Below are positions 2,361-13,427 of a stretch of 64,000 nt of DNA, in pieces; the stretch's first letter is position 1, and each line of letters opens with the position of its first letter. The translations under genes and the position numbers were made by a program. The stretch lies in the sequence record ON529852.1. One strand, written 5' to 3'. Below the pieces are notes generated by a model. It searched no databases. It was not told the origin of the DNA and saw only the letters and a program-made list of their open reading frames with translations.

Positions 2361-2831
2361 ATGGCGGTTCTCGACATCGGCTCATGGAAGCCCTGGCCCT
2401 CGGGCGCCCTGTCCAACTTCCCACCCCACGCCTTCGTGTTCGAGGACGTCGAATGCGCCTCCATGGAGGGGCTGGTCCAGGCGTTCAAGTTCAACGAGCC
2501 CTACAAACAGGTCATCACCTGCAAGGCCGTGGGCGAGGCCGCCAAGAACATGGGACGGCGACGCAACCTGCACTGGCAGCGCGTCCAGACCCTATGGTGG
2601 AAGACGGACGCCTACGACCGCCACAGCCCCGAATACCAGGCGCTGCTGGATCGCGCCTACAACGCCCTGGCGACCAACCCAGACTTCCGCGACGCCTTGC
2701 TCGCGACGGGCGAAGACTTCCTGACCCATTCGATCGGCGGGCGCGATCCGCACGAGACCATCCTGACCGAAGCCGAGTTCTGCACCCGGCTGATGCGGCT
2801 GCGCCGCGAAATCCGCGAAGGCCTGAGATGA
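2361..2831 (+). CDS. NADAR family protein (T4 gp30.3/YbiA-like)
   Basis: Start re-assigned to ATG 2361; LSNF...F..E.VECASMEGLVQAFK and RDALLATG...L.HSIG pattern typical of phage NADAR proteins. Confidence 0.7.
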   Translation: MAVLDIGSWKPWPSGALSNFPPHAFVFEDVECASMEGLVQAFKFNEPYKQVITCKAVGEAAKNMGRRRNLHWQRVQTLWWKTDAYDRHSPEYQALLDRAYNALATNPDFRDALLATGEDFLTHSIGGRDPHETILTEAEFCTRLMRLRREIREGLR

Positions 2832-3082
2832 CCGCCCCTTGCATCTATCTGACGGCCCCGGCCGAACTGCATGAGGCCAAGCGCTTCGGCGACGGCTGGC
2901 GCCAGGTGGTGCAGCCGGAACGCTTCCTGTGTGCTTGGGCCACCTATCACGAGGACGCCGTCGCGGCGTTGTCGAAGGCGCCGCCCTGGCTGGTCACCAA
3001 CGCGCTCGCCGGGCACCTGGTGCGCGCCGACAAGGATTGCCCGCGCTGTCCCTACTACAAGGCCGGCGATCCGGTCGAATAG
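2828..3082 (+). CDS. hypothetical protein with C-terminal CxxC
   Basis: ATGA overlap at 2828, MTAPCIYL...CPRCPYY. Confidence 0.65.
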   Translation: MTAPCIYLTAPAELHEAKRFGDGWRQVVQPERFLCAWATYHEDAVAALSKAPPWLVTNALAGHLVRADKDCPRCPYYKAGDPVE

Positions 3083-3101
3083 CCGTAAATCCTGACATCT
3101 T

Positions 3102-3142
3102 CTGCCGTATTTCTTGACACCTACGGCGGCGTTAACCATAGT
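3102..3142 (+). promoter_or_regulatory. sigma70-type promoter with upstream CTGCCGT motif and TTAACCAT site
   Basis: TTGACA (3114-3119), 17 nt, CATAGT (3137-3142); CTGCCGT at 3102-3108; TTAACCAT at 3132-3139. Confidence 0.65.
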
Positions 3143-3175
3143 CCGAGGCTTGAACCCCCGACCTCAGGACTAGCC

Positions 3176-4414
3176 GTGAGCACCTTTGCTGTACCGATCC
3201 TCGCGATCGACGACGTCTACGATCACCCCAACGCTGATCGCCTCTCCATCATCCGCATTCGCGGCTACGAAGCCGTCGCCGGCAAGGCCGAGGACGGATC
3301 GCACCGCTTTGTCAAGGGGGAGCGCATCATCTACGTGCCCGAGGGCGCGGTGGTGCCGGCCGCGCACCTGAAGGAGCGCGGCTACTGGAACGAGGCCAAG
3401 GACATCGGCCTGCTGGCGGGAACCAAGGGCAACCGCGTCAAGGCGATCACCCTGCGTGGCGTGCTGAGCCAGGGCCTGGTGTGGAAGACCGAACCCCTCG
3501 TCGGTGCAAAGGTCAAGGATCGCGCGACCGGAGACATCGTCGCCCAGGTGAATCCGGAGAAGCCTGCGCTGGCGGTCGCCACGGCCGAAGACGGCTCGAA
3601 AACGGCGGTGATGGTTGATTTCGGCGACGACGTCGCCGACTTCTTCGGCATCACCAAATACGACCCGCCGATCCCTCCGGGCCTGGACGGCGACGTCTTT
3701 GGCCTGTTCGAGGCGATGTTCAACTACGACATCGAGAACGCCAAGGCCTTCCCGAACCTGTTCACCGAGGACGACGTCGTCACGGTGACGGAGAAGCTGC
3801 ACGGCACCTTCTGCCGGATGACCTACATGCCCGGCATCGAGCCGCGCGACGATTTGTTCGGCGACGGCCGCGTGGCGATCACCTCCAAGGGCCTGGGCGC
3901 CGACGGCCTGGTGTTCAAGAACACCGCCTTCAATCGTCAGAAGAACGTCTACGTGCGCAATATGCTGCCGCTGGTGGACCACTTCGTCTCGGCCTGCAAC
4001 CAGGACGCCAAGGGCCTGACCGTCCACCTGATGGGCGAGGTTTACGGCGCTGGCGTGCAGGACCTCAAGTACGGCCGAACCGAGGACCAGGGCTTCGCCG
4101 CCTTCGACGTCTGGATCGAGAAGTCGGGCTTCCTGGCCGAGGTCGAGAAGGATTACGCCTGCATCGCCTTCGGGGTGGAGCGAGTGCCGGTCTTGTTCGA
4201 GGGCTTCTACGACAAGGCGCTGATCGAGGACTTCGCCAAGGGCGACACCACGATCGACGGCGCCGAGAACATCCGCGAAGGCGTCGTCGTGACCCTGACC
4301 GGAGAGCAGGACAAACGCCCCGACGGCAACGGCCTGGGCGGCACCCTGCGCCCGATCTGCAAGGTCGTGTCGGAAGCCTACCTGACCCGCAAGGGCGGGA
4401 CCGAACTGCAATAG
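3176..4414 (+). CDS. RNA ligase (DRB0094/Rnl2-like family)
   Basis: N-terminal HPNADRL, YVPEGAVVP and RVKAITLRGVLSQG; nucleotidyltransferase motifs TEKLHG, GEVYG, FDV, REGVVV. Confidence 0.85.
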   Translation: MSTFAVPILAIDDVYDHPNADRLSIIRIRGYEAVAGKAEDGSHRFVKGERIIYVPEGAVVPAAHLKERGYWNEAKDIGLLAGTKGNRVKAITLRGVLSQGLVWKTEPLVGAKVKDRATGDIVAQVNPEKPALAVATAEDGSKTAVMVDFGDDVADFFGITKYDPPIPPGLDGDVFGLFEAMFNYDIENAKAFPNLFTEDDVVTVTEKLHGTFCRMTYMPGIEPRDDLFGDGRVAITSKGLGADGLVFKNTAFNRQKNVYVRNMLPLVDHFVSACNQDAKGLTVHLMGEVYGAGVQDLKYGRTEDQGFAAFDVWIEKSGFLAEVEKDYACIAFGVERVPVLFEGFYDKALIEDFAKGDTTIDGAENIREGVVVTLTGEQDKRPDGNGLGGTLRPICKVVSEAYLTRKGGTELQ

Positions 4415-4429
4415 GAGTCACGTTTTCCG

Positions 4430-4774
4430 ATGCAGTCGCTTCAGGACGGCCTGGTTGAATGGGCCACCTACGCCTTCGGGCGTGAAACGATCGACGACCA
4501 GCGCCAGCGCGCCATGCGCTGCCTGGAAGAGGCGGTCGAACTGGCCCAGGCCCTGGGTGTGGATGAGGCGGCCTGCCACCGGCAGGTCGTCCACACCTAT
4601 GGCCGCCCCGTCGGCGATCCCGCCCAGGAGGTCGCCGGCGTCATCAACGGCGCTCTGATGGCGGCCGAGAGCATCGGCGTCGACGGCCTGCTGGTCGCCG
4701 AGGCTGAACTGGAGCGGGTCTGGCTCTGCGTGGACGAAATCCGCATCAAGCAACTGGCGAAGGTTCAGCCCTAA
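4430..4774 (+). CDS. MazG-like NTP pyrophosphohydrolase
   Basis: LEEAVELAQA...QEVAGV helical acidic motif. Confidence 0.6.
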   Translation: MQSLQDGLVEWATYAFGRETIDDQRQRAMRCLEEAVELAQALGVDEAACHRQVVHTYGRPVGDPAQEVAGVINGALMAAESIGVDGLLVAEAELERVWLCVDEIRIKQLAKVQP

Positions 4775-4777
4775 GCC

Positions 4778-6712
4778 GTGGCCCACATCGACTATGAGAA
4801 CAACCTGTTTCTCGGACGCGGCACGTTCGAGGAGCGGGAAATCTTCCGTGATGTCCTGGGCAAGTTCCAGGGCTTCACCTTTTCCAAGGAATACGGCTGC
4901 TGGACGACCGGCGACGTCGTGATGGCCCAGGCGGTCAAGGGCGTGGTCTGGACCGACCGCGCCATGGCGCGTCTGCGCACCCTGCTGGAAGCCGCCAAGA
5001 TCAGCGAAGAACTGTCGTGGCGATCGGATACGACCTATGTGCCGCCGTCGCCGCCGGGGTTGAGTTACCTCCCCTACCAACGCGCCGGAATCGAATACGC
5101 ACTGATGCGCAAGGACACGCTGATCGCCGATCAGCCTGGTCTGGGCAAGACCATCCAGGCGATCGGCGTCTTGAACGCTGACGAGACCATCAACAGCGCC
5201 CTGTTCATCGTGCCGGCCTCGCTGAAGATCAACTGGCATCGCGAGATCGACAAGTGGATGCTGCCCAACCTGACCTTCGGCATCGCCGAGGCCAAGCGGA
5301 TCGACAAGGAGTTGATCGGTTACGCCAAGGCCTATGAATATGTCGAGGACGGGGTCTACAAGACCGGGGCCAAGGCGGGCCAGCCCAAGTTCAAGAAGGT
5401 CGAGGTCCAGGGCAAGCCCAAGTATCGCAACGTCGAGACGTCCGACTACTGGCCCGACACCGACGTCGTCATCATCAACTACGACATCCTGGAGCGCTTC
5501 GCGGTCCAGATCAAGGAACGCAACTGGGACTACCTGGTCTGCGACGAATGCCATGCGCTGAAGAGCGCCGCGACCGGGCGCACCCTGTTCGTGCTCGGCG
5601 GCAAGCAGGAGTTCAACAAGGCCCAGCGCGACAAGCGCAAGGCCGAGGGCCTGTCGTCGCGGCCGATCTGGCATCGCGCCATCGACGCCAACCGCCGCGT
5701 CTTCCTGTCCGGCACGCCGATGATGTCGCGGCCGGTGGAGTTGTGGCCCATCGCTCACGCCTTCAACCCCTCCGACCTGGGCCGCGACTATGTCGACTTC
5801 GCCTACCGCTACTGCGCCGCCTGGACGACCGCCTACGGTCTGGACGTTTCGGGCGCCTCGAACCTGGAGGAGTTGGGCCAGAAGGCCCGCGCCAGCTTCA
5901 TGGTGCGCCGGCTGAAACGCGAGGTGCTACCGGAACTGCCGCCCAAGCGCCGCATCGTCGTCACCCTGGACAGCCCTGAAATCCGCGAACTGGTCGCCCG
6001 TGAAGACGAACTGGCCCAGGCGTTGCGCCTCTACGAGAACGTCACCCTCAACAAGGGCGTGGTGGTCGACGAGATCAACCACGGCATCCAGATCGTCAAC
6101 CACATGACGCGGATGGGGATGACGGACGAGTTCGATCCCGACAATCCGAACTGGCGCTCGCTCGACCTCGACTACGCCGCCTCGGTCGCCGGTCTGGAGC
6201 CGCCGGCCGTCGCCATCCTGTTCGAGGAAATGGCGAAGGTGCGCCGCGATCTCGGCCTCGCCAAGCTGAGCGCGCTCAAGCCGTGGATGGATGATTTCCT
6301 GGAGGGTGGCGAGAAGCTGCTGATGTTCGCCTACCACTCCGACGTGGTCAAGGCGCTGGCCCTGGCGGCCGAGAAGTGGAACCCGGCGGTGATCTGGGGC
6401 GGCACGCCCCTGCACAAGCGCCAAGGCGAGGTCGACAAGCTGCAAGGCGACGAAAGCTGCCGCCTGTTTATCGGCAACATCCAGGCGGCCGGCGTCGGCT
6501 TCACCATGACGCGCGCCCATGACGTCGCCTTCGCCGAGGGCGACTGGGTGCCCAGCCAGATTGAGCAGTGTGAGGACCGCGCCTGCCGCATCGGCCAGAC
6601 GGCCGAGAAGATCAACAGCTACTTCCTGGTCGCCAACGGCTCGCTCGATTCCCGCATCGCCCAGGCCGCCAAGGCCAAGGAAGACAACATCAACCTGGCG
6701 ATGGGGGCGTGA
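4778..6712 (+). CDS. SNF2/HARP-like helicase
   Basis: ADQPGLGKT (Walker A), DECH, LSGTP, GVGFTMTRA, QCEDRACRIGQ. Confidence 0.9.
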   Translation: MAHIDYENNLFLGRGTFEEREIFRDVLGKFQGFTFSKEYGCWTTGDVVMAQAVKGVVWTDRAMARLRTLLEAAKISEELSWRSDTTYVPPSPPGLSYLPYQRAGIEYALMRKDTLIADQPGLGKTIQAIGVLNADETINSALFIVPASLKINWHREIDKWMLPNLTFGIAEAKRIDKELIGYAKAYEYVEDGVYKTGAKAGQPKFKKVEVQGKPKYRNVETSDYWPDTDVVIINYDILERFAVQIKERNWDYLVCDECHALKSAATGRTLFVLGGKQEFNKAQRDKRKAEGLSSRPIWHRAIDANRRVFLSGTPMMSRPVELWPIAHAFNPSDLGRDYVDFAYRYCAAWTTAYGLDVSGASNLEELGQKARASFMVRRLKREVLPELPPKRRIVVTLDSPEIRELVAREDELAQALRLYENVTLNKGVVVDEINHGIQIVNHMTRMGMTDEFDPDNPNWRSLDLDYAASVAGLEPPAVAILFEEMAKVRRDLGLAKLSALKPWMDDFLEGGEKLLMFAYHSDVVKALALAAEKWNPAVIWGGTPLHKRQGEVDKLQGDESCRLFIGNIQAAGVGFTMTRAHDVAFAEGDWVPSQIEQCEDRACRIGQTAEKINSYFLVANGSLDSRIAQAAKAKEDNINLAMGA

Positions 6713-7131
6713 CCTCCCGCACCGCGTGGCAGAAAGAGGTCGACGACCTGTTCTGGGGCGGCGAGCCGTTCGCCGACCGCCAGCGCCGGGTCGAGACTGA
6801 ACGCCGCGAGCGGTGGTCCCAGGAAGTGCGCATCAATCCGTCGGCCGAGGTCTTGGTCGGGCTGTGCCGTAAAGCGCGGTCGCAGGGTCTGCGCGGCATG
6901 TTGCACCAGGGCGACCTCTACTGGTGGCAGGCCTATTACGCCACGCACCACGACGTCCTTCACTGGATGGCGATCCCCGGCAACAAACTGGCGACCGGCG
7001 TGGAGTTGCACGTCTTCGATGACGGGGCCGTCGGCCTGACCGCGTTCGATCCTGCGGCCTTCGAGGCGTGTTTGATCCACCCGAGTCTGATCGGCCGGAT
7101 CGACGCTGAAGGCGTGCTGATCAGCCGCTGA
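6709..7131 (+). CDS. hypothetical protein
   Basis: 140-aa ORF, GTGA overlap with the helicase stop. Confidence 0.7.
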   Translation: MTSRTAWQKEVDDLFWGGEPFADRQRRVETERRERWSQEVRINPSAEVLVGLCRKARSQGLRGMLHQGDLYWWQAYYATHHDVLHWMAIPGNKLATGVELHVFDDGAVGLTAFDPAAFEACLIHPSLIGRIDAEGVLISR

Positions 7132-7212
7132 CAGGCGCCGGCGTTTTCGGCGCCGCAACAAAACTGTGATAGGGGCGTTGGTCAGGCTGTAGTTTTTGCC
7201 TTCAGGACCCCT

Positions 7213-7542
7213 ATGCATACCCGACAACCCGAAGAGTTCGCCCGCATTCTCGACGAGGCGGCCGAGCATATCGCACGCCAACCGATCCATCCCGGTCAAT
7301 CCCTGCCGGGGTTATGGAACCTGGACGACGATTCTCACGAGCCGGCGCGCCTGATCGGCGTCATCGTGGCCTCGGCCCTGGCCCAAGTCTGCAAGACCGG
7401 CGATTGCGACCTGCAAGAGGCGCTCGCCAGCTATGCGGCGGTCTCCCACAACATCCCCCTGGTCGCCAAGGGCGGTCCGGACGTGATCGCGGCGCAGAAC
7501 CTGCGCGACGCCGCCCGGACGCTGCGTGAAGCGCGTCACTGA
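7213..7542 (+). CDS. hypothetical protein
   Basis: 109-aa ORF, AGGA SD-like sequence, followed by a terminator. Confidence 0.7.
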   Translation: MHTRQPEEFARILDEAAEHIARQPIHPGQSLPGLWNLDDDSHEPARLIGVIVASALAQVCKTGDCDLQEALASYAAVSHNIPLVAKGGPDVIAAQNLRDAARTLREARH

Positions 7543-7545
7543 CAC

Positions 7546-7580
7546 AAAAAAGACCCGTCGCTGTCGAGCGCCGGGTCTTT
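7546..7580. terminator. bidirectional rho-independent terminator
   Basis: AAAAAAGACCCG...CGGGTCTTT between convergent units. Confidence 0.7.
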
Positions 7581-7585
7581 GATGT

Positions 7586-7672
7586 TGGAGGTGCGACCTG
7601 GACTCGAACCAGGATGAGGGTAATCCCTACGGCTTATGAGGCCGCTGCCTGTTCCAGCCGCGCCACCGCACC
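7586..7672 (-). tRNA. tRNA with CAT anticodon (Met or Ile2), long variable arm, encoded CCA
   Basis: GGTGCGG/TCGCACC acceptor, GCGGC-CTCATAA-GCCGT anticodon arm, variable hairpin AGGG-ATTA-CCCT, CCTGGTTCGAGTCCAGG T-arm, U73. Confidence 0.8.
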
Positions 7673-7684
7673 AAAAAGAAATCC

Positions 7685-7756
7685 AGGCGTGCTTCCGTTA
7701 CACTAAACCGGCGAGGGTCATGACCCTCGGACGCCGGCTGCGGGATCGAACCGCTC
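7685..7756 (-). ncRNA. circularly permuted tRNA-like module (T-arm, closed acceptor stem, D-arm)
   Basis: GCGGTTCGATCCCGC, then AGCCGGCG...CGCCGGTT, then AGTGTAACGGAAGCAC; closely similar to the tRNA-like domain at 12874-12930. Confidence 0.5.
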
Positions 7757-7903
7757 TACCTGTGTATCCGCTGTCCGCGCCACGCCAGCGTCCGCCGCTA
7801 AGCGGGCGCCTGGAGAGTCGAACTCCGACAACGAAGATTCGGACCAGCCCGTCGGCCGGTCCACGAACGCCGCGACGCCGAGGGAGGCGCCGGGGCGATC
7901 GAA

Positions 7904-7981
7904 TGGGAGCGGGGACACGATTCGAACGTGCGATCTCTTGGTTATGAGCCAAGAATGTTGACCGGGCTACACTACCCCGCG
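7904..7981 (-). tRNA. tRNA-Met(CAT), initiator-like
   Basis: CGCGGGG 5' end with C1:U72 mismatch, CTTGG-CTCATAA-CCAAG anticodon arm, TTCGAAT T-loop, CCA. Confidence 0.85.
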
Positions 7982-7991
7982 ACTCTTAGGC

Positions 7992-8293
7992 GCCAGTTCC
8001 GACGGCAGTGCGCCGGCTGGTACTCAACGGACTCCTCCGCCGACCCTGCGCCAGGAACCATGGCGGACGCAGGATCAAGACGAAGGCGTTGCTTTACACC
8101 CACTTCGGACGCCGGACCCGTCGGGCCGGCGAAACTTTGACCAGGGGTTGTGGGACGAGTAATCCCGCCCTCTGGCCCGGCGGACTACTAGGCCTGCCCT
8201 TGCCTGGGCTCCCCCAGGCGTCCGGCACGACTTTTGGTCAACCAACCTTTACTCACGAAGACGGACGTAGCACCCGGCGTGGATCGGAACTGG
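7992..8293 (-). ncRNA. candidate ~300-nt structured RNA of unknown family
   Basis: 10-bp closing helix CCAGTTCCGA/TCGGAACTGG plus nested helices; lies between tmRNA and tRNA-Met; no credible ORF. Confidence 0.5.
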
Positions 8294-8374
8294 TAGGCCC
8301 CTCTCCTGAACGGGCCGCCGTGCTCTGGCGGTGGTCCGTCGTCATCGCCGCCGGCGTCCGCCTGCGAGAGTAAA

Positions 8375-8711
8375 GTGGGGAACTTTCTGTTCCAAGGCCC
8401 GGCAAGCCGGGGTTCCCCATACCCGTGGACGCCCTTAGGCGGCCAGGAGGACTCGTTCGCCAGCGGCGAAGTTGTCGTTGTGTGCTTCGACAGTTGTCAA
8501 AGTTGGATCGTGAGCGGCCGAAACCGCCATGCAGACCCTAGCACTCGCCATTCAATCCCGTCACCAACGTCAATCGATACTGGTCGGCCCCTCAAACCGC
8601 GCCCGTCTCCCATCATAGGAGGGGGATTGGTGGAGCCGACGGGATTCGCACCCGTGTCTTGTCCGTCTGTTTCGTTCTCTCTGCTTCGGTCCGAAGACCT
8701 CCGCGCGACGA
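8375..8711 (-). ncRNA. ssrA: two-piece (circularly permuted) tmRNA, alphaproteobacterial type
   Basis: Acceptor piece ends ACGGGTGCGAATCCCGTCGGCTCCACCA (CCA end at 8628); 36-nt intervening segment; coding piece starts GGGGCCGA at 8591 (G3.U70 Ala identity); tag ORF 8491-8435 reads VEAHNDNFAAGERVLLAA*. The 8375 end is approximate. Confidence 0.9.
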
Positions 8712-8717
8712 AATGCC

Positions 8718-8758
8718 TGTATACAGAGTCCGTTTCTGAGTGTCAAGCATTCCGTCAA
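8718..8758 (-). promoter_or_regulatory. sigma70-type promoter of the tmRNA gene
   Basis: TTGACA (8746-8741), 17 nt, TATACA (8723-8718); upstream TTGACGG-N5 repeat. Confidence 0.75.
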
Positions 8759-8766
8759 AGATTTCT

Positions 8767-8853
8767 TGGAGGGACGGGTGAGAATCGAACTCACGCCAGG
8801 CTTTCGCCAGGAGGATTTGCAGTCCCCCGCCTTACCACTCGGTCCACCGTCCC
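8767..8853 (-). tRNA. tRNA-Cys(GCA) with long variable arm
   Basis: GGGACGG/CCGTCCC acceptor, CTGCAAA anticodon loop, variable hairpin GGC-GAAA-GCC, GTGAGTTCGATTCTCAC T-arm, U73, CCA. Confidence 0.85.
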
Positions 8854-8862
8854 CTGGTGTCG

Positions 8863-8999
8863 GTCTGGAAAGGGGAACCCGCCCGTGCCCGCCGCAGGTC
8901 CCGTGGTCGGTCCCGGCGGCGTCAGGGTTTCACGGCCCCAGGTCGACCCTCTCCCGTGATAGAGGGCGATACGCTGCGGACGGGCTCGCCTTTCCAGAC
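8863..8999. ncRNA. candidate ~137-nt long-hairpin RNA (6S-like architecture?)
   Basis: 11-bp terminal helix GTCTGGAAAGG/CCTTTCCAGAC, further stems and a central bubble with side hairpin CCCTCT/AGAGGG. Confidence 0.5.
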
Positions 9000-9058
9000 G
9001 AAAAGGACCGCCCTGTTGCACTCCCCGGAGGGATCGTGTGACGGCCCGTGACCCTCGC

Positions 9059-9087
9059 CTTATAGCGGAATCGGCCGGGGCCGGCAA
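9059..9087 (-). promoter_or_regulatory. sigma70-type promoter heading the tRNA/ncRNA cluster
   Basis: TTGCCG, 17 nt, TATAAG on the minus strand. Confidence 0.55.
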
Positions 9088-9232
9088 GGTCGAAAACGCG
9101 CGGATGTCAAAAATCTCGACACTTCGTCAGGATTCTGCCGCTAAAATGTCGATTGAACTTTATGTTAAGACGTGCTAAGGTCTTCATGTAGTCGTCAGCA
9201 ACAGACTGCGTCCTGCCAACGGAGACATACAG

Positions 9233-9970
9233 ATGCTGCACAGTGTTCACGGCACGGTTCCGAAGCTTAAACGATGGTGCGGGCCTTCCGCCATCTCCAT
9301 CATTACCGGCCAGCCCTATCACCACGCTCTGGCGTTGCTTAAGGACGTCAAGGCCGCCAGACGCACCTACCGTGTCACGAAGGCGCCGATCGTCAAAGGC
9401 GCGTCATCGCCTAGCGTGCGTACCGTTCTGAAGAGCCTGGGTTATCTGACGACGCAGCGGGTGACGCCGGCAGGGATCACCGTCGCGGCCTGGCTGGCGG
9501 CGCGGCGCCCCGCCGACCAGTTCACCACCTTCCTGATCGTGGCGGCCAACCACTGGATAGTGGTGCGCGGCGAAGAGGCGTGCTGCGGCATTCTCGGGAC
9601 GCCGACGCCGATCGGTCAGATGAAGTTTCGACGCGGCGTCGTCACGGAATGCTGGGTCGTCACGCCGTCCGCGCAGGGCGTGGCCCCGATCGTGACCGAG
9701 GCGCGCAAGCCGCCCGCGCGGGCGTCGTCCTCCTGGGACCGCAGCGAGGCCCGCGACCGCCGCGCCTTCGTCAAGCTGGCGCGCCAGCACGCCTTCACCT
9801 ACGACATCGTCCGGGATTGCGACACGATCCGCTACATGGAGATCGCGCCCTGCGCCATCTTCCCCAAGGGGCTGGACACCCTGCACCATGACTGGGCGGA
9901 AACCCTGGACCGGGTCCGGCATTGCCTCGATCACCCCGAGGACGCCGCCTCGGGCAGCTACGGCCGCTGA
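9233..9970 (+). CDS. hypothetical protein, N-terminal C39/papain-like Cys-His motif
   Basis: WCGPSAISIITG and NHWIVV segments; followed by a terminator. Confidence 0.6.
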   Translation: MLHSVHGTVPKLKRWCGPSAISIITGQPYHHALALLKDVKAARRTYRVTKAPIVKGASSPSVRTVLKSLGYLTTQRVTPAGITVAAWLAARRPADQFTTFLIVAANHWIVVRGEEACCGILGTPTPIGQMKFRRGVVTECWVVTPSAQGVAPIVTEARKPPARASSSWDRSEARDRRAFVKLARQHAFTYDIVRDCDTIRYMEIAPCAIFPKGLDTLHHDWAETLDRVRHCLDHPEDAASGSYGR

Positions 9971-9977
9971 ACGCAAG

Positions 9978-10010
9978 AGCCCCGACCGAGCGATCGGTCG
10001 GGGCTTTTTC
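9978..10010 (+). terminator. rho-independent terminator (possibly bidirectional)
   Basis: GCCCCGACCGA-GCGA-TCGGTCGGGGC followed by TTTTT. Confidence 0.8.
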
Positions 10011-10035
10011 TCGCGCCATCGTTTGTATCTCGGCC

Positions 10036-10952
10036 GGCGCAGCGTCAGAAGGGTGTGTCGCTAGACCTCCGTCGCGGCGCCAGGGCACTGGGGCTCCCTA
10101 GCACAATCCTCACCTGAACGTGGCTTTCCTCCCCAAGGGGCTGAAGGTGGCGGTGTCCAGGCGACCCTGCGGGGCTCACACGACAAGGCCTCTTCTCAAT
10201 GCCAGGCATAGAAGTAGGCAGAGAGCATAGGTTCTTCCTACCCTCGTCATTGTCGTGGTCCGATTTCCGTCTATCACAGCCTCTGGCTGCCGTCACGCCT
10301 GGTTCCCATTTCTAGGACGGCGTTCCCCTCAGAAGACGGGTCCTGGTGGACCGCGTGCGGCTCTTCAGCGCCTGACGGAACTCGACGACGTGGTAGCCGG
10401 CCGTCTGAACAAGCGTCCCCAAGCGCTCCCAGGGACATGCCGTAGGAGTGTGGCAGGGTCCGCCCCACGCTGTGTCAGGATATACGACAATGAAGAGGAG
10501 GGGTCAATACCGCCTCTGGCGGCCGTCACGCCTAATCGTTCGTCTCGGGCGGCGTTCCCGTCAGGCCTGATTGTCCCCGGCCGAGGTTTGTTCGGGGGAG
10601 CGGTGCGGTCAATCACCCCGACTCACGTTCTCTCGTAACCCGACAGTACGGGCTTAAGCGCGCACGAGCGCTGCAAGGCAGTCACGCGGTGGTCGACTTG
10701 GTGAGGTCATCAAGCCCAGTCGCGCAATCCCACCCTGTATGACGGGATTCACGGCTATCGTCAAGGGGAAACGGGCGCTCTCTCCCGGTCACGCCTCGTC
10801 CTGATGTCTCAGCCGGCGTTCGCTTCAGACAGTGCGGCAGTCTCGGGGCCGTCCCACTCTCCCGCTGTCGTCGGGCCTGTTCCCAGAGGAAGGTCTACCC
10901 CAGGGCAGTCTGCTCCAGAGGCCAGGTCAGGGCGAACCCTGTGTGCTGCGCC
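10036..10952 (-). ncRNA. candidate ~917-nt large structured ncRNA (GOLLD/ROOL-class size and context)
   Basis: Interval between two terminators with no convincing gene; 8-bp end-to-end helix GGCGCAGC/GCTGCGCC; second long-range helix 10889-10897 with 10062-10070; three copies of an internal motif. Confidence 0.65.
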
Positions 10953-11003
10953 TAAGGACCTTCAGCAAGATTGAAGCCTACCAGAACAAACCGAAGCGGG
11001 CAA

Positions 11004-11036
11004 AGAAAAACGGCCCCGATCCGAAGATCGGGGCCG
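11004..11036 (-). terminator. rho-independent terminator of the TROVE gene
   Basis: CGGCCCCGATC-TTCG-GATCGGGGCCG followed by TTTTTCTTT on the minus strand. Confidence 0.8.
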
Positions 11037-11094
11037 CATCGTTCTTTACGCGGCAGCGTAATTCCGCGAACGGATTACGAATACCCGTATTGGA

Positions 11095-12483
11095 TCAGCC
11101 GCCGACGAGGCCGTCGTCGAACTCCATCGCCTCGACCTCACGGATATAGCGCAGGACGCTCTCCGAGAAGCCGTCGATGTGGACCCATCCGTTGCCGTAG
11201 CCGATGCCGTTTTCATAGCTGGCGACGTTGATCATGTAGGCCTTGCCGGCCTTGGGCGCCGGCAGTCGCCCGCCACCCATCCCGCTGCTCAGCGTTCCCG
11301 ACGCCTGTTCGTCGGTGATGACGATCAGGCGGTCGCAGGCGAACTGACGGTTCACCACGTCCACGGCCTGGGCCAGGGCGGTGCCGTTGTGCGGCTGCGA
11401 ACGGATCACCGCATCGACCCCCGCCATGCCCTTGCGGGCCGGGACCTCGACCAGACCGTTGGAGAAGGTCACGACGCGCACGTCGCCCGGCAGGATCGCC
11501 GCCAGCGTCGCCGCCGCATCCATCCGGGTCAGGTCCGACTTTCCGGACAGTTTTTGCCGCATGGAGTAGGAGACGTCGACCATGACCACGGTCGAACCCT
11601 TCAAGGGTTCGGCCTGATCAATCGTCGCCACGAGGGCGTCGTCCAGCGCCCGCTCGAACGAGGGCGCATAACGCGCCGCCGCCGTGAAGCGGAAGGGCAG
11701 GACGCGGTCCGCGCCCTTGCGCGCGCGGATCGCAGCATTGACCAGATCGCGGTCGACGCCGGCCTGCTCCATGTTGCGCAGGTTGCGCAGCAGGGCGAGG
11801 TAGCCCAGTTTGCCGTCGGCCAGCAGACGCGTGAACGTCGCCTTCTTGTCGGCGCCGCCCGACAGGGCGACTTCCCAGGTGTCGGGCGCCGTCAGTTCAT
11901 TGTCGACCAGCTTCTTGTAGAGGACCTCGCGGTCGTCGTTCGCCGGCTTGGCGTGCGCCAGAAACAGAACGTCGCGCAGGCGCACGGACTTGGCCCGGTC
12001 GTACTTGGCGATCTGATAGGCGTCGAAGTTGCCGAAGGCCAGCGACAGCCCCTTCTTCACCTGAGCGGACAGCGGCGCCTTCTTGCCGTCGGCGCGCACC
12101 GGGTTGAGCGCCCAGTAGAGAGCCAGGAACTCGCTCAGTTCATCGGCGCGCTGGATGACGCGGGCGATGGTCAGCGACACCAGGGCCGAGCCGGACCCGC
12201 GTTGGGCCAGAACGACGAGCAGCAGAAGGGGGACGTGACGCAGCTTGGCGTCCTCACGCGCTTCAATCGCGATCTGGGCGAGGGTCTCGACCGGAACTTC
12301 CTTGGCGAGGCTCTGGATACGGTCGGCGATCGACACGCCGCTCTCGTAGAAATTGTCTTCCCACAGCAGGCAGGACATGACCGACCGGCGCAGGGCCTGG
12401 GTCTTGGTCATCCGATCGGCCGGTGCGCCTTCATGGGTGCGCGCGGTGGTCGTCTTGGGCTTTGCGTTGATCGACGCCATAAT
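11095..12483 (-). CDS. rsr: Ro60/TROVE-domain RNA-binding protein with C-terminal vWA domain
   Basis: Start probably ATG 12483 (MASINAKP, GGAGG SD). THEGAPA, LRRSVMSCLLWEDNFYE, KYDR, TWE, YLALLRNLRN, RVLPFRF; vWA MIDAS DVSYSM...T...VITDEQ. Confidence 0.92.
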   Translation of the reverse strand: MMASINAKPKTTTARTHEGAPADRMTKTQALRRSVMSCLLWEDNFYESGVSIADRIQSLAKEVPVETLAQIAIEAREDAKLRHVPLLLLVVLAQRGSGSALVSLTIARVIQRADELSEFLALYWALNPVRADGKKAPLSAQVKKGLSLAFGNFDAYQIAKYDRAKSVRLRDVLFLAHAKPANDDREVLYKKLVDNELTAPDTWEVALSGGADKKATFTRLLADGKLGYLALLRNLRNMEQAGVDRDLVNAAIRARKGADRVLPFRFTAAARYAPSFERALDDALVATIDQAEPLKGSTVVMVDVSYSMRQKLSGKSDLTRMDAAATLAAILPGDVRVVTFSNGLVEVPARKGMAGVDAVIRSQPHNGTALAQAVDVVNRQFACDRLIVITDEQASGTLSSGMGGGRLPAPKAGKAYMINVASYENGIGYGNGWVHIDGFSESVLRYIREVEAMEFDDGLVGG

Positions 12484-12508
12484 GGGTCCCCTCCTCGTCT
12501 GGTCAAGC

Positions 12509-12675
12509 GACCAAGAGGTCGGGGAGGAACAAGCACGAGCCCGGTTCATCCGGTGCGTCTACCACTTCCGCCACCTGCACCAGAGATGCAGGCCAGGACT
12601 TGAACCTGGATACCCTTGACGGGCGCCGGCTCCAGCGAAGTATAGGCTCGTTACGCCATCCCCGACCTCTTGGTC
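12509..12675 (-). ncRNA. Y RNA, YrlA-like unit 1
   Basis: 17-bp terminal helix; TGGCGT/GTTCC internal motif; permuted tRNA domain: CCAGGTTCAAGTCCTGG T-arm, loop-closed TGCA acceptor-like stem, GTGGCGGAAGTGGTAGACGCAC D-arm. Confidence 0.8.
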
Positions 12676-12682
12676 AGTGAAC

Positions 12683-12825
12683 TCCGGCGCTCTGGTAGGA
12701 AGGCGGGGGAACATGCGCGACCGGATGCGGGATCGAACCGCGAGACCGGGGGTTTGAATCCCGGCTTATCAACCAGCGATGTAACCGACCGCTCTCACCA
12801 CCCGCCCACCAACCAGGGCGCCGGA
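12683..12825 (-). ncRNA. Y RNA-like unit 2 (non-permuted tRNA-like insert)
   Basis: 14-bp terminal helix; TGGTGA/GTTCC motif; inner hairpin with AUUCAAA loop followed by GCGGTTCGATCCCGC T-arm. Confidence 0.7.
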
Positions 12826-12833
12826 AAAGCAGA

Positions 12834-12987
12834 AACATGAAGGCGGCGGGGGAATAAGCGACCCCACTCTTTTTAGGCGTGCTACCGTTACACCAAACGC
12901 CGCTAGGCGACGTTGCGGAATCGAACCGCTCATCCCGCTCCACATGCGATGAAAGTGACGTCTATCGCCACCCACCGCCTTCATGTT
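12834..12987 (-). ncRNA. Y RNA, YrlA-like unit 3
   Basis: AACATGAAGGCGG terminal helix; TGGCGA/ATTCC motif; GCGGTTCGATTCCGC T-arm, AACGTCGC-CTAG-CGGCGTT closed acceptor-like stem, GGTGTAACGGTAGCAC D-arm. Confidence 0.8.
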
Positions 12988-12995
12988 GTTGGCTC

Positions 12996-13170
12996 AGAAG
13001 CGTGTGGTGGATCGACAGGGGAACCGGCGGAAAGGCGCCGTTTGGACTATCGTTCTACCAACTGAACTACCGCCGCGCCCGAAGGTGCGCCGAGTGGGAT
13101 TCGAACCCACGACCTACAGTTTGCGAAGAAGGCCTCTCCCTCACCACCTGTCGATCCGCCACACGCTTCT
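12996..13170 (-). ncRNA. Y RNA, YrlA-like unit 4
   Basis: ~23-bp terminal helix; TGGTGA/GTTCC motif; GTGGGTTCGAATCCCAC T-arm, TTCG-capped acceptor-like stem, GTAGTTCAGTTGGTAGAAC D-arm. Confidence 0.8.
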
Positions 13171-13240
13171 CAACCCTGTCCTAGACAGACCCGAGGACCC
13201 AACCCCGGACGAGGAACCGAAGTTCCCCGGCGGGATCAGG

Positions 13241-13328
13241 ATCGTCCGGGAATAGGCGGAACCGAGAGCGGGGCCAAGGCCCCCACGTACCAAAAACGAA
13301 GAACTCGGTCCCTGTCGCCACGGACAAT
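13241..13328 (-). ncRNA. short Y RNA-like unit 5 (no tRNA domain)
   Basis: ATTGTCCG/CGGACGAT helix; TGGCGA/ATTCC motif; ACCGAG/CTCGGT stem; pyrimidine-rich loop TTCTTCGTTTTT; GGGGCC/GGCCCC hairpin. Confidence 0.6.
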
Positions 13329-13354
13329 GACTGTGTGCCCGATCCCGGTTCAGG

Positions 13355-13372
13355 TGTCAACAACAACGGCAG
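13355..13372 (-). promoter_or_regulatory. CTGCCGT-N5-TTGACA element upstream of the Y-RNA/Ro60 operon
   Basis: Exact match to the recurrent motif; the -10 box is weak (CACACA/CACAGT). Confidence 0.5.
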
Positions 13373-13392
13373 AAAAAGTTGAGATTACCGGC

Positions 13393-13427
13393 AAAAAGAA
13401 AACCCCCGGCCGAAGCCAGGGGTTTCC
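13393..13427 (-). terminator. rho-independent terminator after the repressor-like gene
   Basis: AAACCCCTGGC-TTCG-GCCGGGGGTTTT-CTTTTT on the minus strand. Confidence 0.75.

What the first reader, a model, noticed from the sequence alone, without database searches (positions are those of the whole stretch)
2361..13328. Possible integrated phage RNA-protection and translation-rescue system
Seen within 11 kb: NADAR, a DRB0094-type RNA ligase, a MazG-like protein, three tRNAs, tRNA-like decoy modules, tmRNA, several large structured RNAs, and Ro60 with five Y-like RNAs. Established: in bacteria Ro60/Y RNA loci are often linked to RNA ligation (RtcB) and tRNA-damage responses, and phages use RNA ligases and extra tRNAs against anticodon-nuclease defences. 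Inference: these parts work together against host abortive-infection systems that cleave or modify RNA, with Ro60 and tRNA-mimic Y RNAs recruiting the ligase to broken tRNAs or absorbing toxins. No RtcB is visible in this window, so a non-RtcB ligase partner would be new.
Basis: inference. Interest (0 to 1): 0.75.

Follow-up and report, generated by a model that had tools for sequence, protein, structure and literature searches.

The report
Phage Ro60, Y RNAs, tmRNA island
A giant Brevundimonas phage carries side by side a Ro60 protein with five Y RNAs (four of them tRNA mimics), a two-piece tmRNA with three tRNAs, and an RNA-ligase repair gene string; each part is a known kind, and relatives show they are separate modules, not one machine.

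Summary
The window is Brevundimonas jumbo phage vB_BpoS-Kabachok (100% identity). Most listed parts are real. They are a DRB0094/Rnl5 RNA ligase, a T4 gp30.3-family (NADAR-like) protein, three tRNAs, a permuted tmRNA that the GenBank record does not annotate, and Ro60 preceded on its strand by five tandem Y-like RNAs. Four of the five contain tRNA-like domains with strong covariation. Not confirmed: the 'MazG-like' protein, and 'several large structured RNAs' downstream of Ro60, which is three copies of a 58-nt spacer element in unstructured DNA.

Comparative evidence splits the region into three modules. (A) RlaP, gp30.3, ligase and SNF2 helicase on the + strand. (B) tRNA-Cys, tmRNA and tRNA-Met on the - strand. 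(C) the Y array with Ro60 on the - strand. A and B stay together in relatives, including some with no Ro60 nearby. Block B also occurs in phiCbK-like phages that lack Ro60. In CcrColossus and CcrPW, module C lies 23-25 kb from A+B. Other Ro60 phages show Y arrays and tRNA genes nearby, but no ligase.

Ro60 with YrlA-like RNAs was already reported for CcrColossus. This is a new member of known kinds. The proposed Ro60-ligase partnership is not supported.

The parts
2361..2831 (+). T4 gp30.3-family protein (NADAR-superfamily-like), 156 aa
   Evidence: PF08010 Phage_30_3 at 183.4 bits. NADAR PF08719 reaches only 19.9 bits (cut-off 35.1). Weak TIGR02464 hit. The same gene sits next to the ligase in L024, L025 and Gurke.
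2828..3082 (+). 84-aa hypothetical protein
   Evidence: Annotated CDS. No family hit.
3176..4414 (+). ATP-dependent RNA ligase of the DRB0094/Rnl5 type (N-terminal OB domain plus nucleotidyltransferase domain)
   Evidence: TIGR02306 at 166.2 bits, above the 151.15 cut-off. PF21189 plus PF09414. Best PDB relative is Naegleria gruberi RNA ligase, E 1.4e-7, with KLHG aligned to its KLDG motif.
4430..4774 (+). 114-aa helical protein of unknown function (the probable 'MazG-like' candidate; not verified)
   Evidence: No Pfam, NCBIfam or PDB hit. Nine homologues share an invariant EE..E stretch. AlphaFold pLDDT 65.5, all-helical. No Foldseek match. A protein of 113-124 aa occupies the same position between ligase and helicase in L024 and L025.
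4778..6712 (+). SNF2-family helicase
   Evidence: PF00176 plus PF00271. It adjoins the ligase in CcrColossus, CcrPW, L024 and L025.
6709..7542 (+). Two small hypothetical proteins (6709-7131 and 7213-7542)
   Evidence: Annotated CDSs. The only hit is PHROG 12371, of unknown function, for the second.
7544..7585 (.). Hairpin terminator shared by the converging + strand genes and - strand RNA genes
   Evidence: Inverted repeat I12. Terminator-like site.
7586..7672 (-). 87-nt tRNA with anticodon CAU and a long variable arm
   Evidence: ARAGORN. Rfam tRNA 38.5 bits. Conserved in relatives.
7687..7756 (-). Permuted tRNA-like module (T arm, closed acceptor-like hairpin, D arm) between the two CAU tRNAs; it has no long closing stem
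   Evidence: Model R1 non-seed hit, 24.2 bits, E 1e-5. It shares repeats D2 and D7 with Y RNA YB. Conserved in Gurke.
7904..7981 (-). tRNA-Met (CAU), 78 nt
   Evidence: ARAGORN. Rfam tRNA 53.2 bits.
8100..8746 (-). Two-piece (permuted) tmRNA gene. Promoter-like TTGACA-17-TATACA at 8746-8718; Rfam match at 8690-8435; conserved 3' continuation to about 8100
   Evidence: RF04321 at 57.1 bits (gathering score 47). Tag AHNDNFAAGERVLLAA* at 8485-8435. The acceptor piece ends GGCUCCACCA and the coding piece begins GGGGCC, giving a G3-U pair (alignment). The spacer between the two pieces varies in Gurke. The block is 90% identical to Gurke where the flanks diverge.
8767..8853 (-). 87-nt tRNA-Cys (GCA) with a long variable arm
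   Evidence: ARAGORN. Rfam tRNA 46.8 bits. Conserved next to the tmRNA across the subfamily.
8863..8999 (-). 137-nt structured RNA with a 23-bp closing stem, directly upstream of tRNA-Cys; function unknown
   Evidence: Inverted repeat I4. z = -5.2. The stem is kept through paired changes in Gurke.
9233..9970 (+). 245-aa hypothetical protein
   Evidence: Annotated CDS. Eleven homologues, none with a Pfam domain.
10272..10832 (-). Three copies of a roughly 58-nt conserved element (10832-10775, 10568-10508, 10336-10272), each followed by promoter-like hexamers
   Evidence: Repeat families D1, D3 and D6. Pattern counts of 3 against 0.05 expected. The hairpin stem covaries between copies and phages. 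The units between copies are not unusually stable and carry no conserved ORF.
11010..11037 (-). Intrinsic terminator after Ro60
   Evidence: 12-bp GC-rich hairpin followed by a T run.
11095..12480 (-). Ro60 orthologue (TROVE ring plus vWA domain), 461 aa
   Evidence: PF05731 at 45.5 bits, PF13519 at 27.1 bits. PHROG 850 'RNA-binding protein'. PDB 9KOP/9L5Y Thermus phage Ro60, E 1.2e-20 over residues 11-451. Homologues in 96 phage records.
12509..12675 (-). Y RNA 'YD': 17-bp closing stem, variable-arm hairpin, T arm, closed acceptor-like hairpin, D arm (permuted tRNA mimic)
   Evidence: Inverted repeat I10. z = -5.3. R1 58.6 bits. 14 of 50 pairs compensatory in orthologues.
12683..12825 (-). 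Y RNA 'YC': long stem enclosing a non-permuted tRNA-like domain that has an anticodon-arm-like hairpin
   Evidence: z = -4.6. Weak tRNA-Sec model match, 21.8 bits. 17 of 48 pairs compensatory.
12834..12987 (-). Y RNA 'YB': permuted tRNA mimic
   Evidence: Inverted repeat I16. z = -5.2. R1 38.2 bits. 17 of 50 pairs compensatory.
12991..13175 (-). Y RNA 'YA': 29-bp closing stem plus permuted tRNA mimic
   Evidence: Inverted repeat I2. z = -5.2. Rfam YrlA 27.1 bits over the T, acceptor-like and D core. R1 59.5 bits. 20 of 58 pairs compensatory.
13243..13326 (-). Y RNA 'YE': short, with no tRNA-like domain. Invariant UGUCCG/CGGACG stem flanks UGGCGACAG and AUUCC
   Evidence: Conserved in six phages, with paired changes in the inner stem. 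z = -3.0 for 13176-13329.
13355..13427 (-). Terminator of the upstream HTH gene (13427-13398), then a TTGACA hexamer (13360-13355) that probably starts the Y array and Ro60 transcript
   Evidence: Terminator. The hexamer is read from the sequence; its promoter role is inferred.

Best explanation
The 11-kb stretch is a junction of three separately inherited RNA-metabolism modules of a jumbo phage. It is not one integrated system.

Module C (13360-11095, - strand) is a phage version of the bacterial Ro60/Y RNA ribonucleoprotein. One promoter probably drives five tandem Y RNAs followed by the Ro60 mRNA. Each Y RNA has a closing stem with a conserved asymmetric loop (5' GGYGNNAG, 3' UUCC), which is the likely Ro60 docking site. 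Four of the five carry a tRNA-shaped effector domain. By analogy with the Deinococcus, Salmonella and Thermus-phage systems, the Y RNAs gate the Ro60 ring and tether it to tRNA-recognising or RNA-degrading host proteins such as PNPase. That would redirect structured-RNA turnover during infection.

Module B (8999-7586, - strand) supplies a two-piece tmRNA and three tRNAs for translation and ribosome rescue.

Module A (+ strand, starting just left of the window) is an RNA-repair string: RlaP nucleotidyltransferase, gp30.3/NADAR-like protein, Rnl5 nick-sealing ligase and an SNF2 helicase.

Shown: the identities, structures and gene order. Inferred: Ro60 binding, PNPase tethering, co-transcription and all in vivo roles.
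For: Identities.

Y RNA structure:
- z-scores of -4.6 to -5.3 for the four long modules.
- 14-20 compensatory pairs per module.
- For the tRNA-like core, 91.9% of cells are paired against 59% in shuffles, and the covariation score is 0.751 against 0.182.

Same architecture elsewhere, upstream of Ro60 on its strand: Gurke, Kikimora, CcrColossus, CcrPW and Xanthomonas phage MET23-P3, plus the unrelated Rhizobium and Streptomyces phages as non-seed hits of up to 46 bits.

Literature: YrlA-like RNAs lie within 4 kb of Ro60 on the same strand in bacteria and 22 phages (PMC4201824), CcrColossus among them (PMC12135203). The Thermus phage Ro60 binds two phage Y RNAs and forms a complex with host PNPase (PMC12135203).

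Modularity:
- The gene strings in L024 and L025 have no TROVE gene.
- Block B occurs in Ro60-less phiCbK-like phages.
- In Colossus-type phages C and A+B are 23-25 kb apart.
- Transcription converges at 7544-7585.
Against: - There are no expression, binding or activity data for this phage.
- The Y RNAs score only 27 bits against Rfam YrlA (gathering score 69), and the published GNCGAAN0-1G motif appears only as a variant.
- Within Dolichocephalovirinae, every Ro60-bearing genome also has the ligase or a shortened remnant of it. In all seven Brevundimonas phages the three modules abut. A lineage-specific functional link therefore cannot be excluded.
- The PNPase tether is an analogy, not a test.
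Confidence: 0.62

Rival explanations
1. Ro60 and its tRNA-mimic Y RNAs recruit the Rnl5 ligase (with NADAR-like protein, tmRNA and extra tRNAs) to broken tRNAs. Together they form one counter-defence system against host RNA-cleaving abortive-infection toxins.
For: - All parts lie within 11 kb in seven Brevundimonas phages.
- Within the subfamily, Ro60 and the ligase occur in the same genomes.
- In Salmonella, rsr and the Y RNA genes share an operon with the RtcB ligase, and that operon is induced by cleaved tRNAs (PMC7790460).
- Jumbo-phage surveys place Ro/TROVE proteins among RNA-repair functions (PMC7824862).
Against: - The ligase is on the opposite strand, in a converging transcription unit.
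- Ro60 lies 23-25 kb from the ligase in CcrColossus and CcrPW.
- The ligase string with the tmRNA block occurs without TROVE within 10 kb in L024 and L025.
- Four other Ro60 phages have no ligase within 6 kb.
- The ligase's conserved neighbours are RlaP and gp30.3, not Ro60.
- Gurke and Kikimora keep Ro60 and the Y array but have only a 178-aa ligase-like ORF.
Confidence: 0.12
2. The Y RNA array acts mainly as a set of tRNA decoys. It competes for host tRNA-directed nucleases or modification enzymes, and Ro60 only stabilises the RNAs. The ligase and PNPase play no part.
For: - Four different tRNA-like domains with canonical T and D arms.
- Hughes et al. raise competitive inhibition of an anticodon nuclease by YrlA as a possibility (PMC7790460).
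- YrlA is recognised by tRNA-modifying enzymes (PMC4201824).
- Similar modules occur inside tRNA clusters, including in a Ro60-less phage (L018:5127-5184, 47.8 bits).
Against: - Three of the four mimics have the Ro60-docking stem where the anticodon arm would be. They therefore lack the loop that anticodon nucleases cut or recognise (read).
- No defence gene or nuclease target is known for this host.
- The strict linkage of the arrays to Ro60 in many phages suggests that the protein is central.
Confidence: 0.18
3. The modules are decayed tRNA genes or mere processing scaffolds of a polycistronic transcript, with no function of their own.
For: - Annotators called parts of them tRNA-Ser (Gurke, Kikimora) and tRNA-Gln (CcrColossus).
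- They lie near true tRNA genes.
Against: - The order T arm, closed acceptor hairpin, D arm cannot arise by simple decay of a tRNA gene.
- Each module type is conserved from Caulobacter to Brevundimonas phages, with compensatory changes and invariant loop motifs.
Confidence: 0.04

Closest known systems
Ro60 with YrlA-like Y RNAs of Caulobacter phage CcrColossus and other phages (Chen et al. 2014, PMC4201824; cited for CcrColossus in PMC12135203)
   Same: Ro60 is orthologous (69% amino-acid identity). The Y modules are orthologous type by type, lie upstream on the same strand, and follow the same HTH, dUTPase and ribonucleotide reductase genes.
   Different: Kabachok has five modules against seven or eight in CcrColossus. 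In Kabachok the locus abuts the tRNA/tmRNA block; in CcrColossus it abuts the lysis genes. I could not read how many RNAs the 2014 paper listed, because its supplement is not held.
Salmonella Typhimurium rsr-yrlBA-rtcBA operon (YrlA, Rfam RF02553)
   Same: A Ro60 orthologue with Y RNAs nearby on the same strand. The Y RNAs have paired 5' and 3' ends and a domain ordered V, T arm, closed acceptor-like stem, D arm (PMC4201824).
   Different: There is no RtcB, RtcA or RtcR here. The Y RNAs precede Ro60 rather than follow it. The score against RF02553 is 27 bits (gathering score 69). The 5' motif is GGYGNNAG rather than GNCGAAN0-1G. One module has the other orientation, with its tRNA-like domain not permuted.
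Thermus phage phiLo Ro60 with Yrl1 and Yrl2 (PDB 9KOP, 9L5Y; PMC12135203)
   Same: It is the closest solved structure (E 1.2e-20, full length). It is phage-encoded, with Y-like RNAs upstream of the gene. It was shown to bind them and to form a complex with host PNPase.
   Different: It has two Y RNAs, not described as tRNA mimics. The host and phage lineage are different.
Rnl5 RNA ligases (Deinococcus DraRnl/DRB0094, Naegleria NgrRnl) with the RlaP nucleotidyltransferase
   Same: TIGR02306 equivalog above its cut-off. An N-terminal OB domain plus a nucleotidyltransferase domain. RlaP is encoded in the same gene string. The RlaP-ligase association in jumbo phages is described in PMC7824862.
   Different: The string also holds a gp30.3-family protein and an SNF2 helicase. 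Activity has not been tested.
Two-piece (circularly permuted) tmRNA of Alphaproteobacteria (RF04321, RF01849)
   Same: The acceptor piece precedes the coding piece. There is a G3-U pair and an ACCA end. The tag ends in LAA.
   Different: It is phage-encoded. It has a long conserved 3' region. ARAGORN missed it, and the genome paper reported that no tmRNA was detected (PMC10070969).
T4 gp30.3 / NADAR superfamily
   Same: Strong PF08010 match.
   Different: It matches the NADAR profile only below threshold. Any role in reversing ADP-ribosylation is an idea from my own knowledge, not a result.

Membership tests
YrlA-type Y RNA (RF02553; Chen et al. 2014) | Encoded within 4 kb of a Ro60 orthologue, on the same strand | tested here: met
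   All five modules lie 29-846 nt upstream of Ro60 on the - strand.
YrlA-type Y RNA (RF02553; Chen et al. 2014) | 5' and 3' ends pair into a long stem that closes the RNA | tested here: met
   Stems of 17-29 bp in YA-YD and 6 bp in YE. They are kept through compensatory changes.
YrlA-type Y RNA (RF02553; Chen et al. 2014) | tRNA-like domain in the order (V), T arm, closed acceptor-like stem, D arm | tested here: met
   Met in YA, YB and YD. YC has a non-permuted tRNA-like domain. YE has none.
YrlA-type Y RNA (RF02553; Chen et al. 2014) | GNCGAAN0-1G motif near the 5' end | tested here: inconclusive
   At that position the clade has GGUGGCGUAG. The Kabachok variants are GGUGGUGAG, GGUGGCGAUAG, GAUGGCGUAAC and GUGGCGACAG. 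These are similar to the published motif but not identical.
YrlA-type Y RNA (RF02553; Chen et al. 2014) | Reaches the Rfam gathering score | tested here: not met
   Best score is 27.1 bits against 69. Relatives reach 30-52 bits.
YrlA-type Y RNA (RF02553; Chen et al. 2014) | Bound by Ro60 and carrying tRNA-type modifications | not testable with these tools
   This needs binding and modification assays.
Ro60 / TROVE protein | TROVE (HEAT-repeat ring) domain followed by a vWA domain | tested here: met
   PF05731 at 45.5 bits (cut-off 23). PF13519 at 27.1 bits (cut-off 27). Full-length alignment to 9KOP.
Rnl5 / DRB0094 RNA ligase | Matches the family equivalog above its cut-off; N-terminal OB domain plus C-terminal nucleotidyltransferase with a motif I lysine | tested here: met
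   TIGR02306 at 166.2 bits, above 151.15. PF21189 plus PF09414. KLHG aligned to the KLDG of NgrRnl.
Rnl5 / DRB0094 RNA ligase | Seals 3'-OH/5'-phosphate nicks in duplex RNA | not testable with these tools
   This is a biochemical assay.
Permuted tmRNA (RF04321) | Reaches the gathering score; acceptor piece upstream of the coding piece; tag reading frame with a stop codon; alanine identity pair and CCA end | tested here: met
   57.1 bits against 47. Tag of 16 residues ending LAA*. GGCUCC-ACCA pairs with GGGGCC to give G3-U (alignment). The inter-piece spacer is variable.
NADAR domain (PF08719) | Reaches the Pfam gathering score | tested here: not met
   19.9 bits against 35.1. The protein is a PF08010 gp30.3-family member.
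MazG-like NTP pyrophosphohydrolase | Profile or fold match to MazG or a related all-alpha NTP pyrophosphatase | tested here: not met
   No hit for any ORF of the region. The Foldseek search of a low-confidence model gave nothing.
rsr-Y RNA-rtcBA type RNA repair operon | Ro60, Y RNAs and the ligase co-transcribed in one operon | tested here: not met
   No RtcB is annotated in the window. The only ligase is on the opposite strand in a converging unit.

The most novel reading that the evidence does not exclude
The Y array is a multi-specific tRNA-mimic battery. Each module imitates a different class of tRNA, and Ro60 uses them to capture, shield from, or report on different tRNA-directed host nucleases. 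In the Brevundimonas phages this has become functionally coupled to the adjoining tmRNA and the RlaP/Rnl5 repair string. That would make an Rnl5-type ligase, rather than RtcB, the repair partner of a Ro60 RNP.
Probability: 0.1. Interest if true: 0.7.

Novelty: new member of a known kind. Interest (0 to 1): 0.35.

Why it matters
Ro60/Y RNA particles are conserved from bacteria to humans, yet their function in bacteria and phages is still poorly understood. This phage lineage offers unusually rich natural material. It has arrays of five to eight Y RNAs with clear orthology classes, invariant loop motifs that mark the probable Ro60 docking site, and both orientations of tRNA mimicry in one transcript.

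The analysis also corrects the public annotation:
- The tmRNA is not annotated.
- Y modules are mis-called as tRNAs in related phages.
- The RlaP gene is unlabelled.

It shows that physical clustering in one genome is weak evidence for a shared mechanism. It does not reveal a new kind of system.

Tried and rejected
- MazG-like protein. I tested the 114-aa ORF and all the other small ORFs against Pfam (also at E up to 10), NCBIfam, PHROGs and PDB. I also predicted a structure and ran Foldseek. Nothing supports the call. Only an invariant acidic EE..E motif in an all-helical protein remains as a hint.\n- Large structured RNAs in 9971-11094. Folding z-scores are about 0 on both strands. There is no conserved peptide against Gurke, Colossus or PW and no Rfam family.\n- GOLLD. 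A GOLLD RNA turned up in a related phiCbK-like contig, but not in this window.\n- A crude motif-plus-stem scan for Y RNAs was too unspecific, giving about 2.6 chance hits per shuffled window. I replaced it with covariance model R1.\n- The first MFE run with a large maximum span over the tRNA gap gave uninformative long-range pairings. Alignment to relatives was used instead.\n- Literature. Burroughs & Aravind 2016 and the Sim et al. 2020 review are not held, and the supplement of Chen et al. 2014 is not held. What these sources say about Ro-ligase linkage and about the number of CcrColossus Y RNAs could not be checked.\n- ORF 9233-9970 has homologues but no domain.

Full report
**Source and layout.** The region is 100% identical to Brevundimonas phage vB_BpoS-Kabachok (ON529852.1). 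This is a 356-kb siphovirus of the Dolichocephalovirinae, and window position equals record position minus 186,000. Four close relatives are 91-98% identical, and Gurke and Kikimora are about 80% identical. The Caulobacter phages CcrColossus and CcrPW share parts of the region. G+C is about 65%, so mechanical ORFs fill all frames. I relied on the record's genes and on profile hits.
- The + strand genes run to 7542.
- Everything from 13427 down to 7586 is on the - strand, except ORF 9233-9970.
- The two sets converge on a hairpin terminator at 7544-7585.

**Proteins.**
- 3176-4414 is a DRB0094/Rnl5 RNA ligase. TIGR02306 scores 166 bits against a cut-off of 151. It has an N-terminal OB domain plus PF09414. 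Its best solved relative is the Naegleria Rnl5 ligase, with the motif I lysine aligned.
- 2361-2831 is a T4 gp30.3-family protein. It resembles NADAR only below threshold.
- 4778-6712 is an SNF2 helicase.
- 11095-12480 is Ro60. It has TROVE plus vWA domains and aligns over its full length to the Thermus phage Ro60 structures.
- No ORF could be shown to be MazG-like.

**Y RNAs.** Between the terminator of the upstream HTH gene (13427-13398) and the Ro60 start codon lie five abutting modules on the Ro60 strand.
- Four have 17-29-bp closing stems and fold far better than shuffled sequence, with z from -4.6 to -5.3. Coding controls give z from -0.3 to -1.6.
- YA, YB and YD contain, in this order, a T arm with a UUCRANY loop, a closed acceptor-like hairpin, and a D arm with the GG dinucleotide. 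That is a circularly permuted tRNA, the layout Chen et al. defined for YrlA (PMC4201824).
- YC encloses a tRNA-like domain in normal order, with an anticodon-arm-like hairpin.
- YE (13326-13243) is short and has no tRNA-like domain.
- A shared motif follows the 5' strand of each stem: GGUGGCGUAG in the clade, with variants in Kabachok. UUCC precedes the 3' strand. This resembles the published GNCGAAN0-1G motif but does not equal it.
- Each module type has orthologues in Marchewka, Gurke, Kikimora, CcrColossus and CcrPW. Between 14 and 20 base pairs per module are kept through changes on both sides.

**Covariance model R1 of the tRNA-like core**.
- It scores 38-60 bits on the Kabachok modules.
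- It finds one extra copy in the window, inside the tRNA cluster at 7687-7756 (24 bits).
- On the 24 aligned matches, 91.9% of cells are paired against 59% in shuffles. The covariation score is 0.751 against 0.182 in shuffles and at most 0.14 for slid partners.
- The model also hits, as non-seed matches of up to 46 bits, just upstream of Ro60 in an unrelated Rhizobium phage and a Streptomyces phage.
- Arrays of such RNAs are therefore a general feature of phage Ro60 loci. Chen et al. reported YrlA-like RNAs next to Ro60 in 22 phages, and a later paper names CcrColossus among them (PMC4201824, PMC12135203).
- Rfam's own YrlA model reaches only 27 bits here and 30-52 bits in relatives, below its gathering score of 69.

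**tRNA and tmRNA block.** Three tRNAs are present.
- ARAGORN misses the tmRNA, and the genome paper states that none was detected (PMC10070969).
- Rfam's permuted-tmRNA model matches 8690-8435 above threshold.
- The acceptor piece ends in GGCUCCACCA and pairs with GGGGCC at the start of the coding piece, which gives the G3-U alanine identity pair.
- The tag reads AHNDNFAAGERVLLAA.
- The spacer between the two pieces differs in length in Gurke. The gene, with a TTGACA-17-TATACA promoter-like site and a 330-nt conserved 3' region, is 90% identical to Gurke while its flanks diverge.
- This accounts for most of the 'structured RNA' between 7982 and 8434.
- A separate 137-nt RNA with a 23-bp stem precedes tRNA-Cys (8863-8999, z = -5.2).

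**The gap downstream of Ro60.** The 1.1 kb from 11094 to 9971 is not unusually structured (z about 0) and holds no conserved ORF.
- It contains three copies of a roughly 58-nt element: CUGAnGnGAACGCCG..AGA, about 10 nt, AGGCGUGAC, then a hairpin.
- The hairpin stem covaries between copies and between phages.
- Each copy is followed by promoter-like hexamers.
- An exact-pattern scan finds the element only in genomes of this phage subfamily. There it sits directly beside tRNA genes in the tRNA/tmRNA cluster, including in phages without Ro60.
- I regard it as a spacer or processing element of non-coding RNA clusters. Its function is unexplained.

**Are the parts one system?** Gene order in relatives says no.
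- The ligase's conserved neighbours are RlaP (PF10127, 244 bits; encoded about 2.5 kb left of gp30.3, just outside the window), gp30.3, a protein of about 114 aa, and the SNF2 helicase.
- The same string occurs in two metagenomic contigs whose ligases are 52-56% identical. It is followed there, on the opposite strand, by tRNA-Met x2 and a permuted tmRNA (plus tRNA-Cys in one contig). No TROVE gene lies within 10 kb.
- In CcrPW and CcrColossus, the tRNA/tmRNA block, the helicase and the ligase are adjacent (140.5-146 kb and 131.9-137.6 kb). Ro60 with its Y array lies 23-25 kb away, next to the lysis genes.
- phiCbK-like phages have the tRNA-Cys/tmRNA/tRNA-Met block but no Ro60.
- Gurke and Kikimora keep Ro60, the Y array, gp30.3 and the tmRNA block. 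In place of the ligase they have only a 178-aa ligase-like ORF with no Pfam hit.
- The 43-kb Xanthomonas phages carry a 60%-identical Ro60 with three Y RNAs. They are absent from the list of ligase hits.
- Rhizobium, crAss-like, Streptomyces and Vibrio Ro60 phages have no ligase or RtcB annotated within 6 kb. All four have tRNA genes nearby.
- The recurrent partner of phage Ro60 is therefore a Y RNA array near tRNA genes, not a ligase.

**Caveat.** Within the subfamily, Ro60 and the ligase (or its remnant) occur in the same genomes. This may be a single ancestral event, so it cannot count as independent evidence.

**Mechanism.**
- Most likely, the Y array and Ro60 are made from one transcript and form Ro60/Y RNA particles like those of bacteria and of Thermus phage phiLo. 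In those systems the Y RNA docks on the ring and tethers it to host PNPase (PMC4201824, PMC12135203).
- The tRNA-shaped domains are the effector ends.
- Three of the four mimics lack an anticodon loop, because the docking stem takes its place. That fits tethering or competition for enzymes that read the tRNA elbow and acceptor end. It fits less well a role as decoys for anticodon nucleases. This is inference.
- The tmRNA and tRNAs support translation.
- RlaP, gp30.3 and the Rnl5 ligase form a separate end-healing and nick-sealing set, as described for jumbo phages (PMC7824862).

**Verdict.** The region is a well-preserved new member of known kinds, with some annotation corrections and one unexplained repeated element.

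Noticed in passing
window 10272-10832 (-); also L012:47-80, L013:2243-2275 and 3487-3600, L018:2698-2731 and 4835-4960: A roughly 58-nt element (GAACGCCG..AGA, about 10 nt, AGGCGUGAC, then a covarying hairpin). It is repeated three times downstream of Ro60. Elsewhere it is found only in genomes of this phage subfamily, directly beside tRNA genes and often in tandem, including in phages that lack Ro60. It is not in Rfam and its function is unknown.
   Followed up: partly
window 8100-8746 (-): The permuted tmRNA gene is not annotated in any of the seven Brevundimonas phage records, and the genome paper reports that no tmRNA was detected (PMC10070969). ARAGORN does call the orthologous tmRNA in CcrPW-like and metagenomic relatives.
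   Followed up: yes
window 7586-7672 (-) and 8767-8853 (-): Two of the three tRNAs are 87 nt long with a long variable arm, although their anticodons (CAU and GCA) normally belong to short-arm tRNAs. The tRNA-Cys has U73 followed by an encoded CCA. Both are conserved next to the tmRNA across the subfamily. The 78-nt tRNA-Met appears to have a C1-U72 mismatch.
   Followed up: no
L018:3261-3747 (-): A GOLLD RNA (RF02032, 171 bits, gathering score 150) with an embedded tRNA-Lys lies in a 221,828-bp phiCbK-like genome, between tRNA-Cys and the tmRNA. There is no GOLLD match in this window.
   Followed up: no
L003:9811-9885, L007:4811-4885, L004:9173-9240: Features annotated as tRNA-Ser (Gurke, Kikimora) and tRNA-Gln (CcrColossus) lie inside Y RNA modules. 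They are probably mis-called tRNA-like domains.
   Followed up: partly
L001:618-1475 (record 184,978-185,835; just left of window position 1): The gene annotated 'hypothetical protein' (and 'DNA polymerase' in Papperlapapp) is an RlaP RNA-repair nucleotidyltransferase (PF10127, 244 bits). It belongs to the ligase gene string.
   Followed up: yes
L018:5127-5184; L024:13050-13107 (-): Permuted tRNA-like modules (R1 scores of 47.8 and 39.2 bits) also occur where no Ro60 gene is nearby. One is in a phage genome with no Ro60 at all.
   Followed up: partly
window 11303-12368 (-): The Ro60 gene is about 73% identical in DNA and 60% in protein to that of 43-kb Xanthomonas/Xylella phages, which are otherwise unrelated. 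Those phages also carry Y RNAs upstream. This suggests transfer of the whole Ro60 and Y RNA cassette between phage lineages.
   Followed up: partly
window 4778-6712 (+) versus L002:5382-8360: The helicase gene is 1,935 nt in Kabachok but 2,979 nt in Papperlapapp and Domovoi. The roughly 1-kb in-frame insertion (an intein or an inserted domain?) was not examined.
   Followed up: no
window 8863-8999 (-): A 137-nt RNA with a 23-bp closing stem lies directly upstream of tRNA-Cys. It is conserved, with paired changes, in Gurke. It has no tRNA-like domain and no Rfam match.
   Followed up: partly
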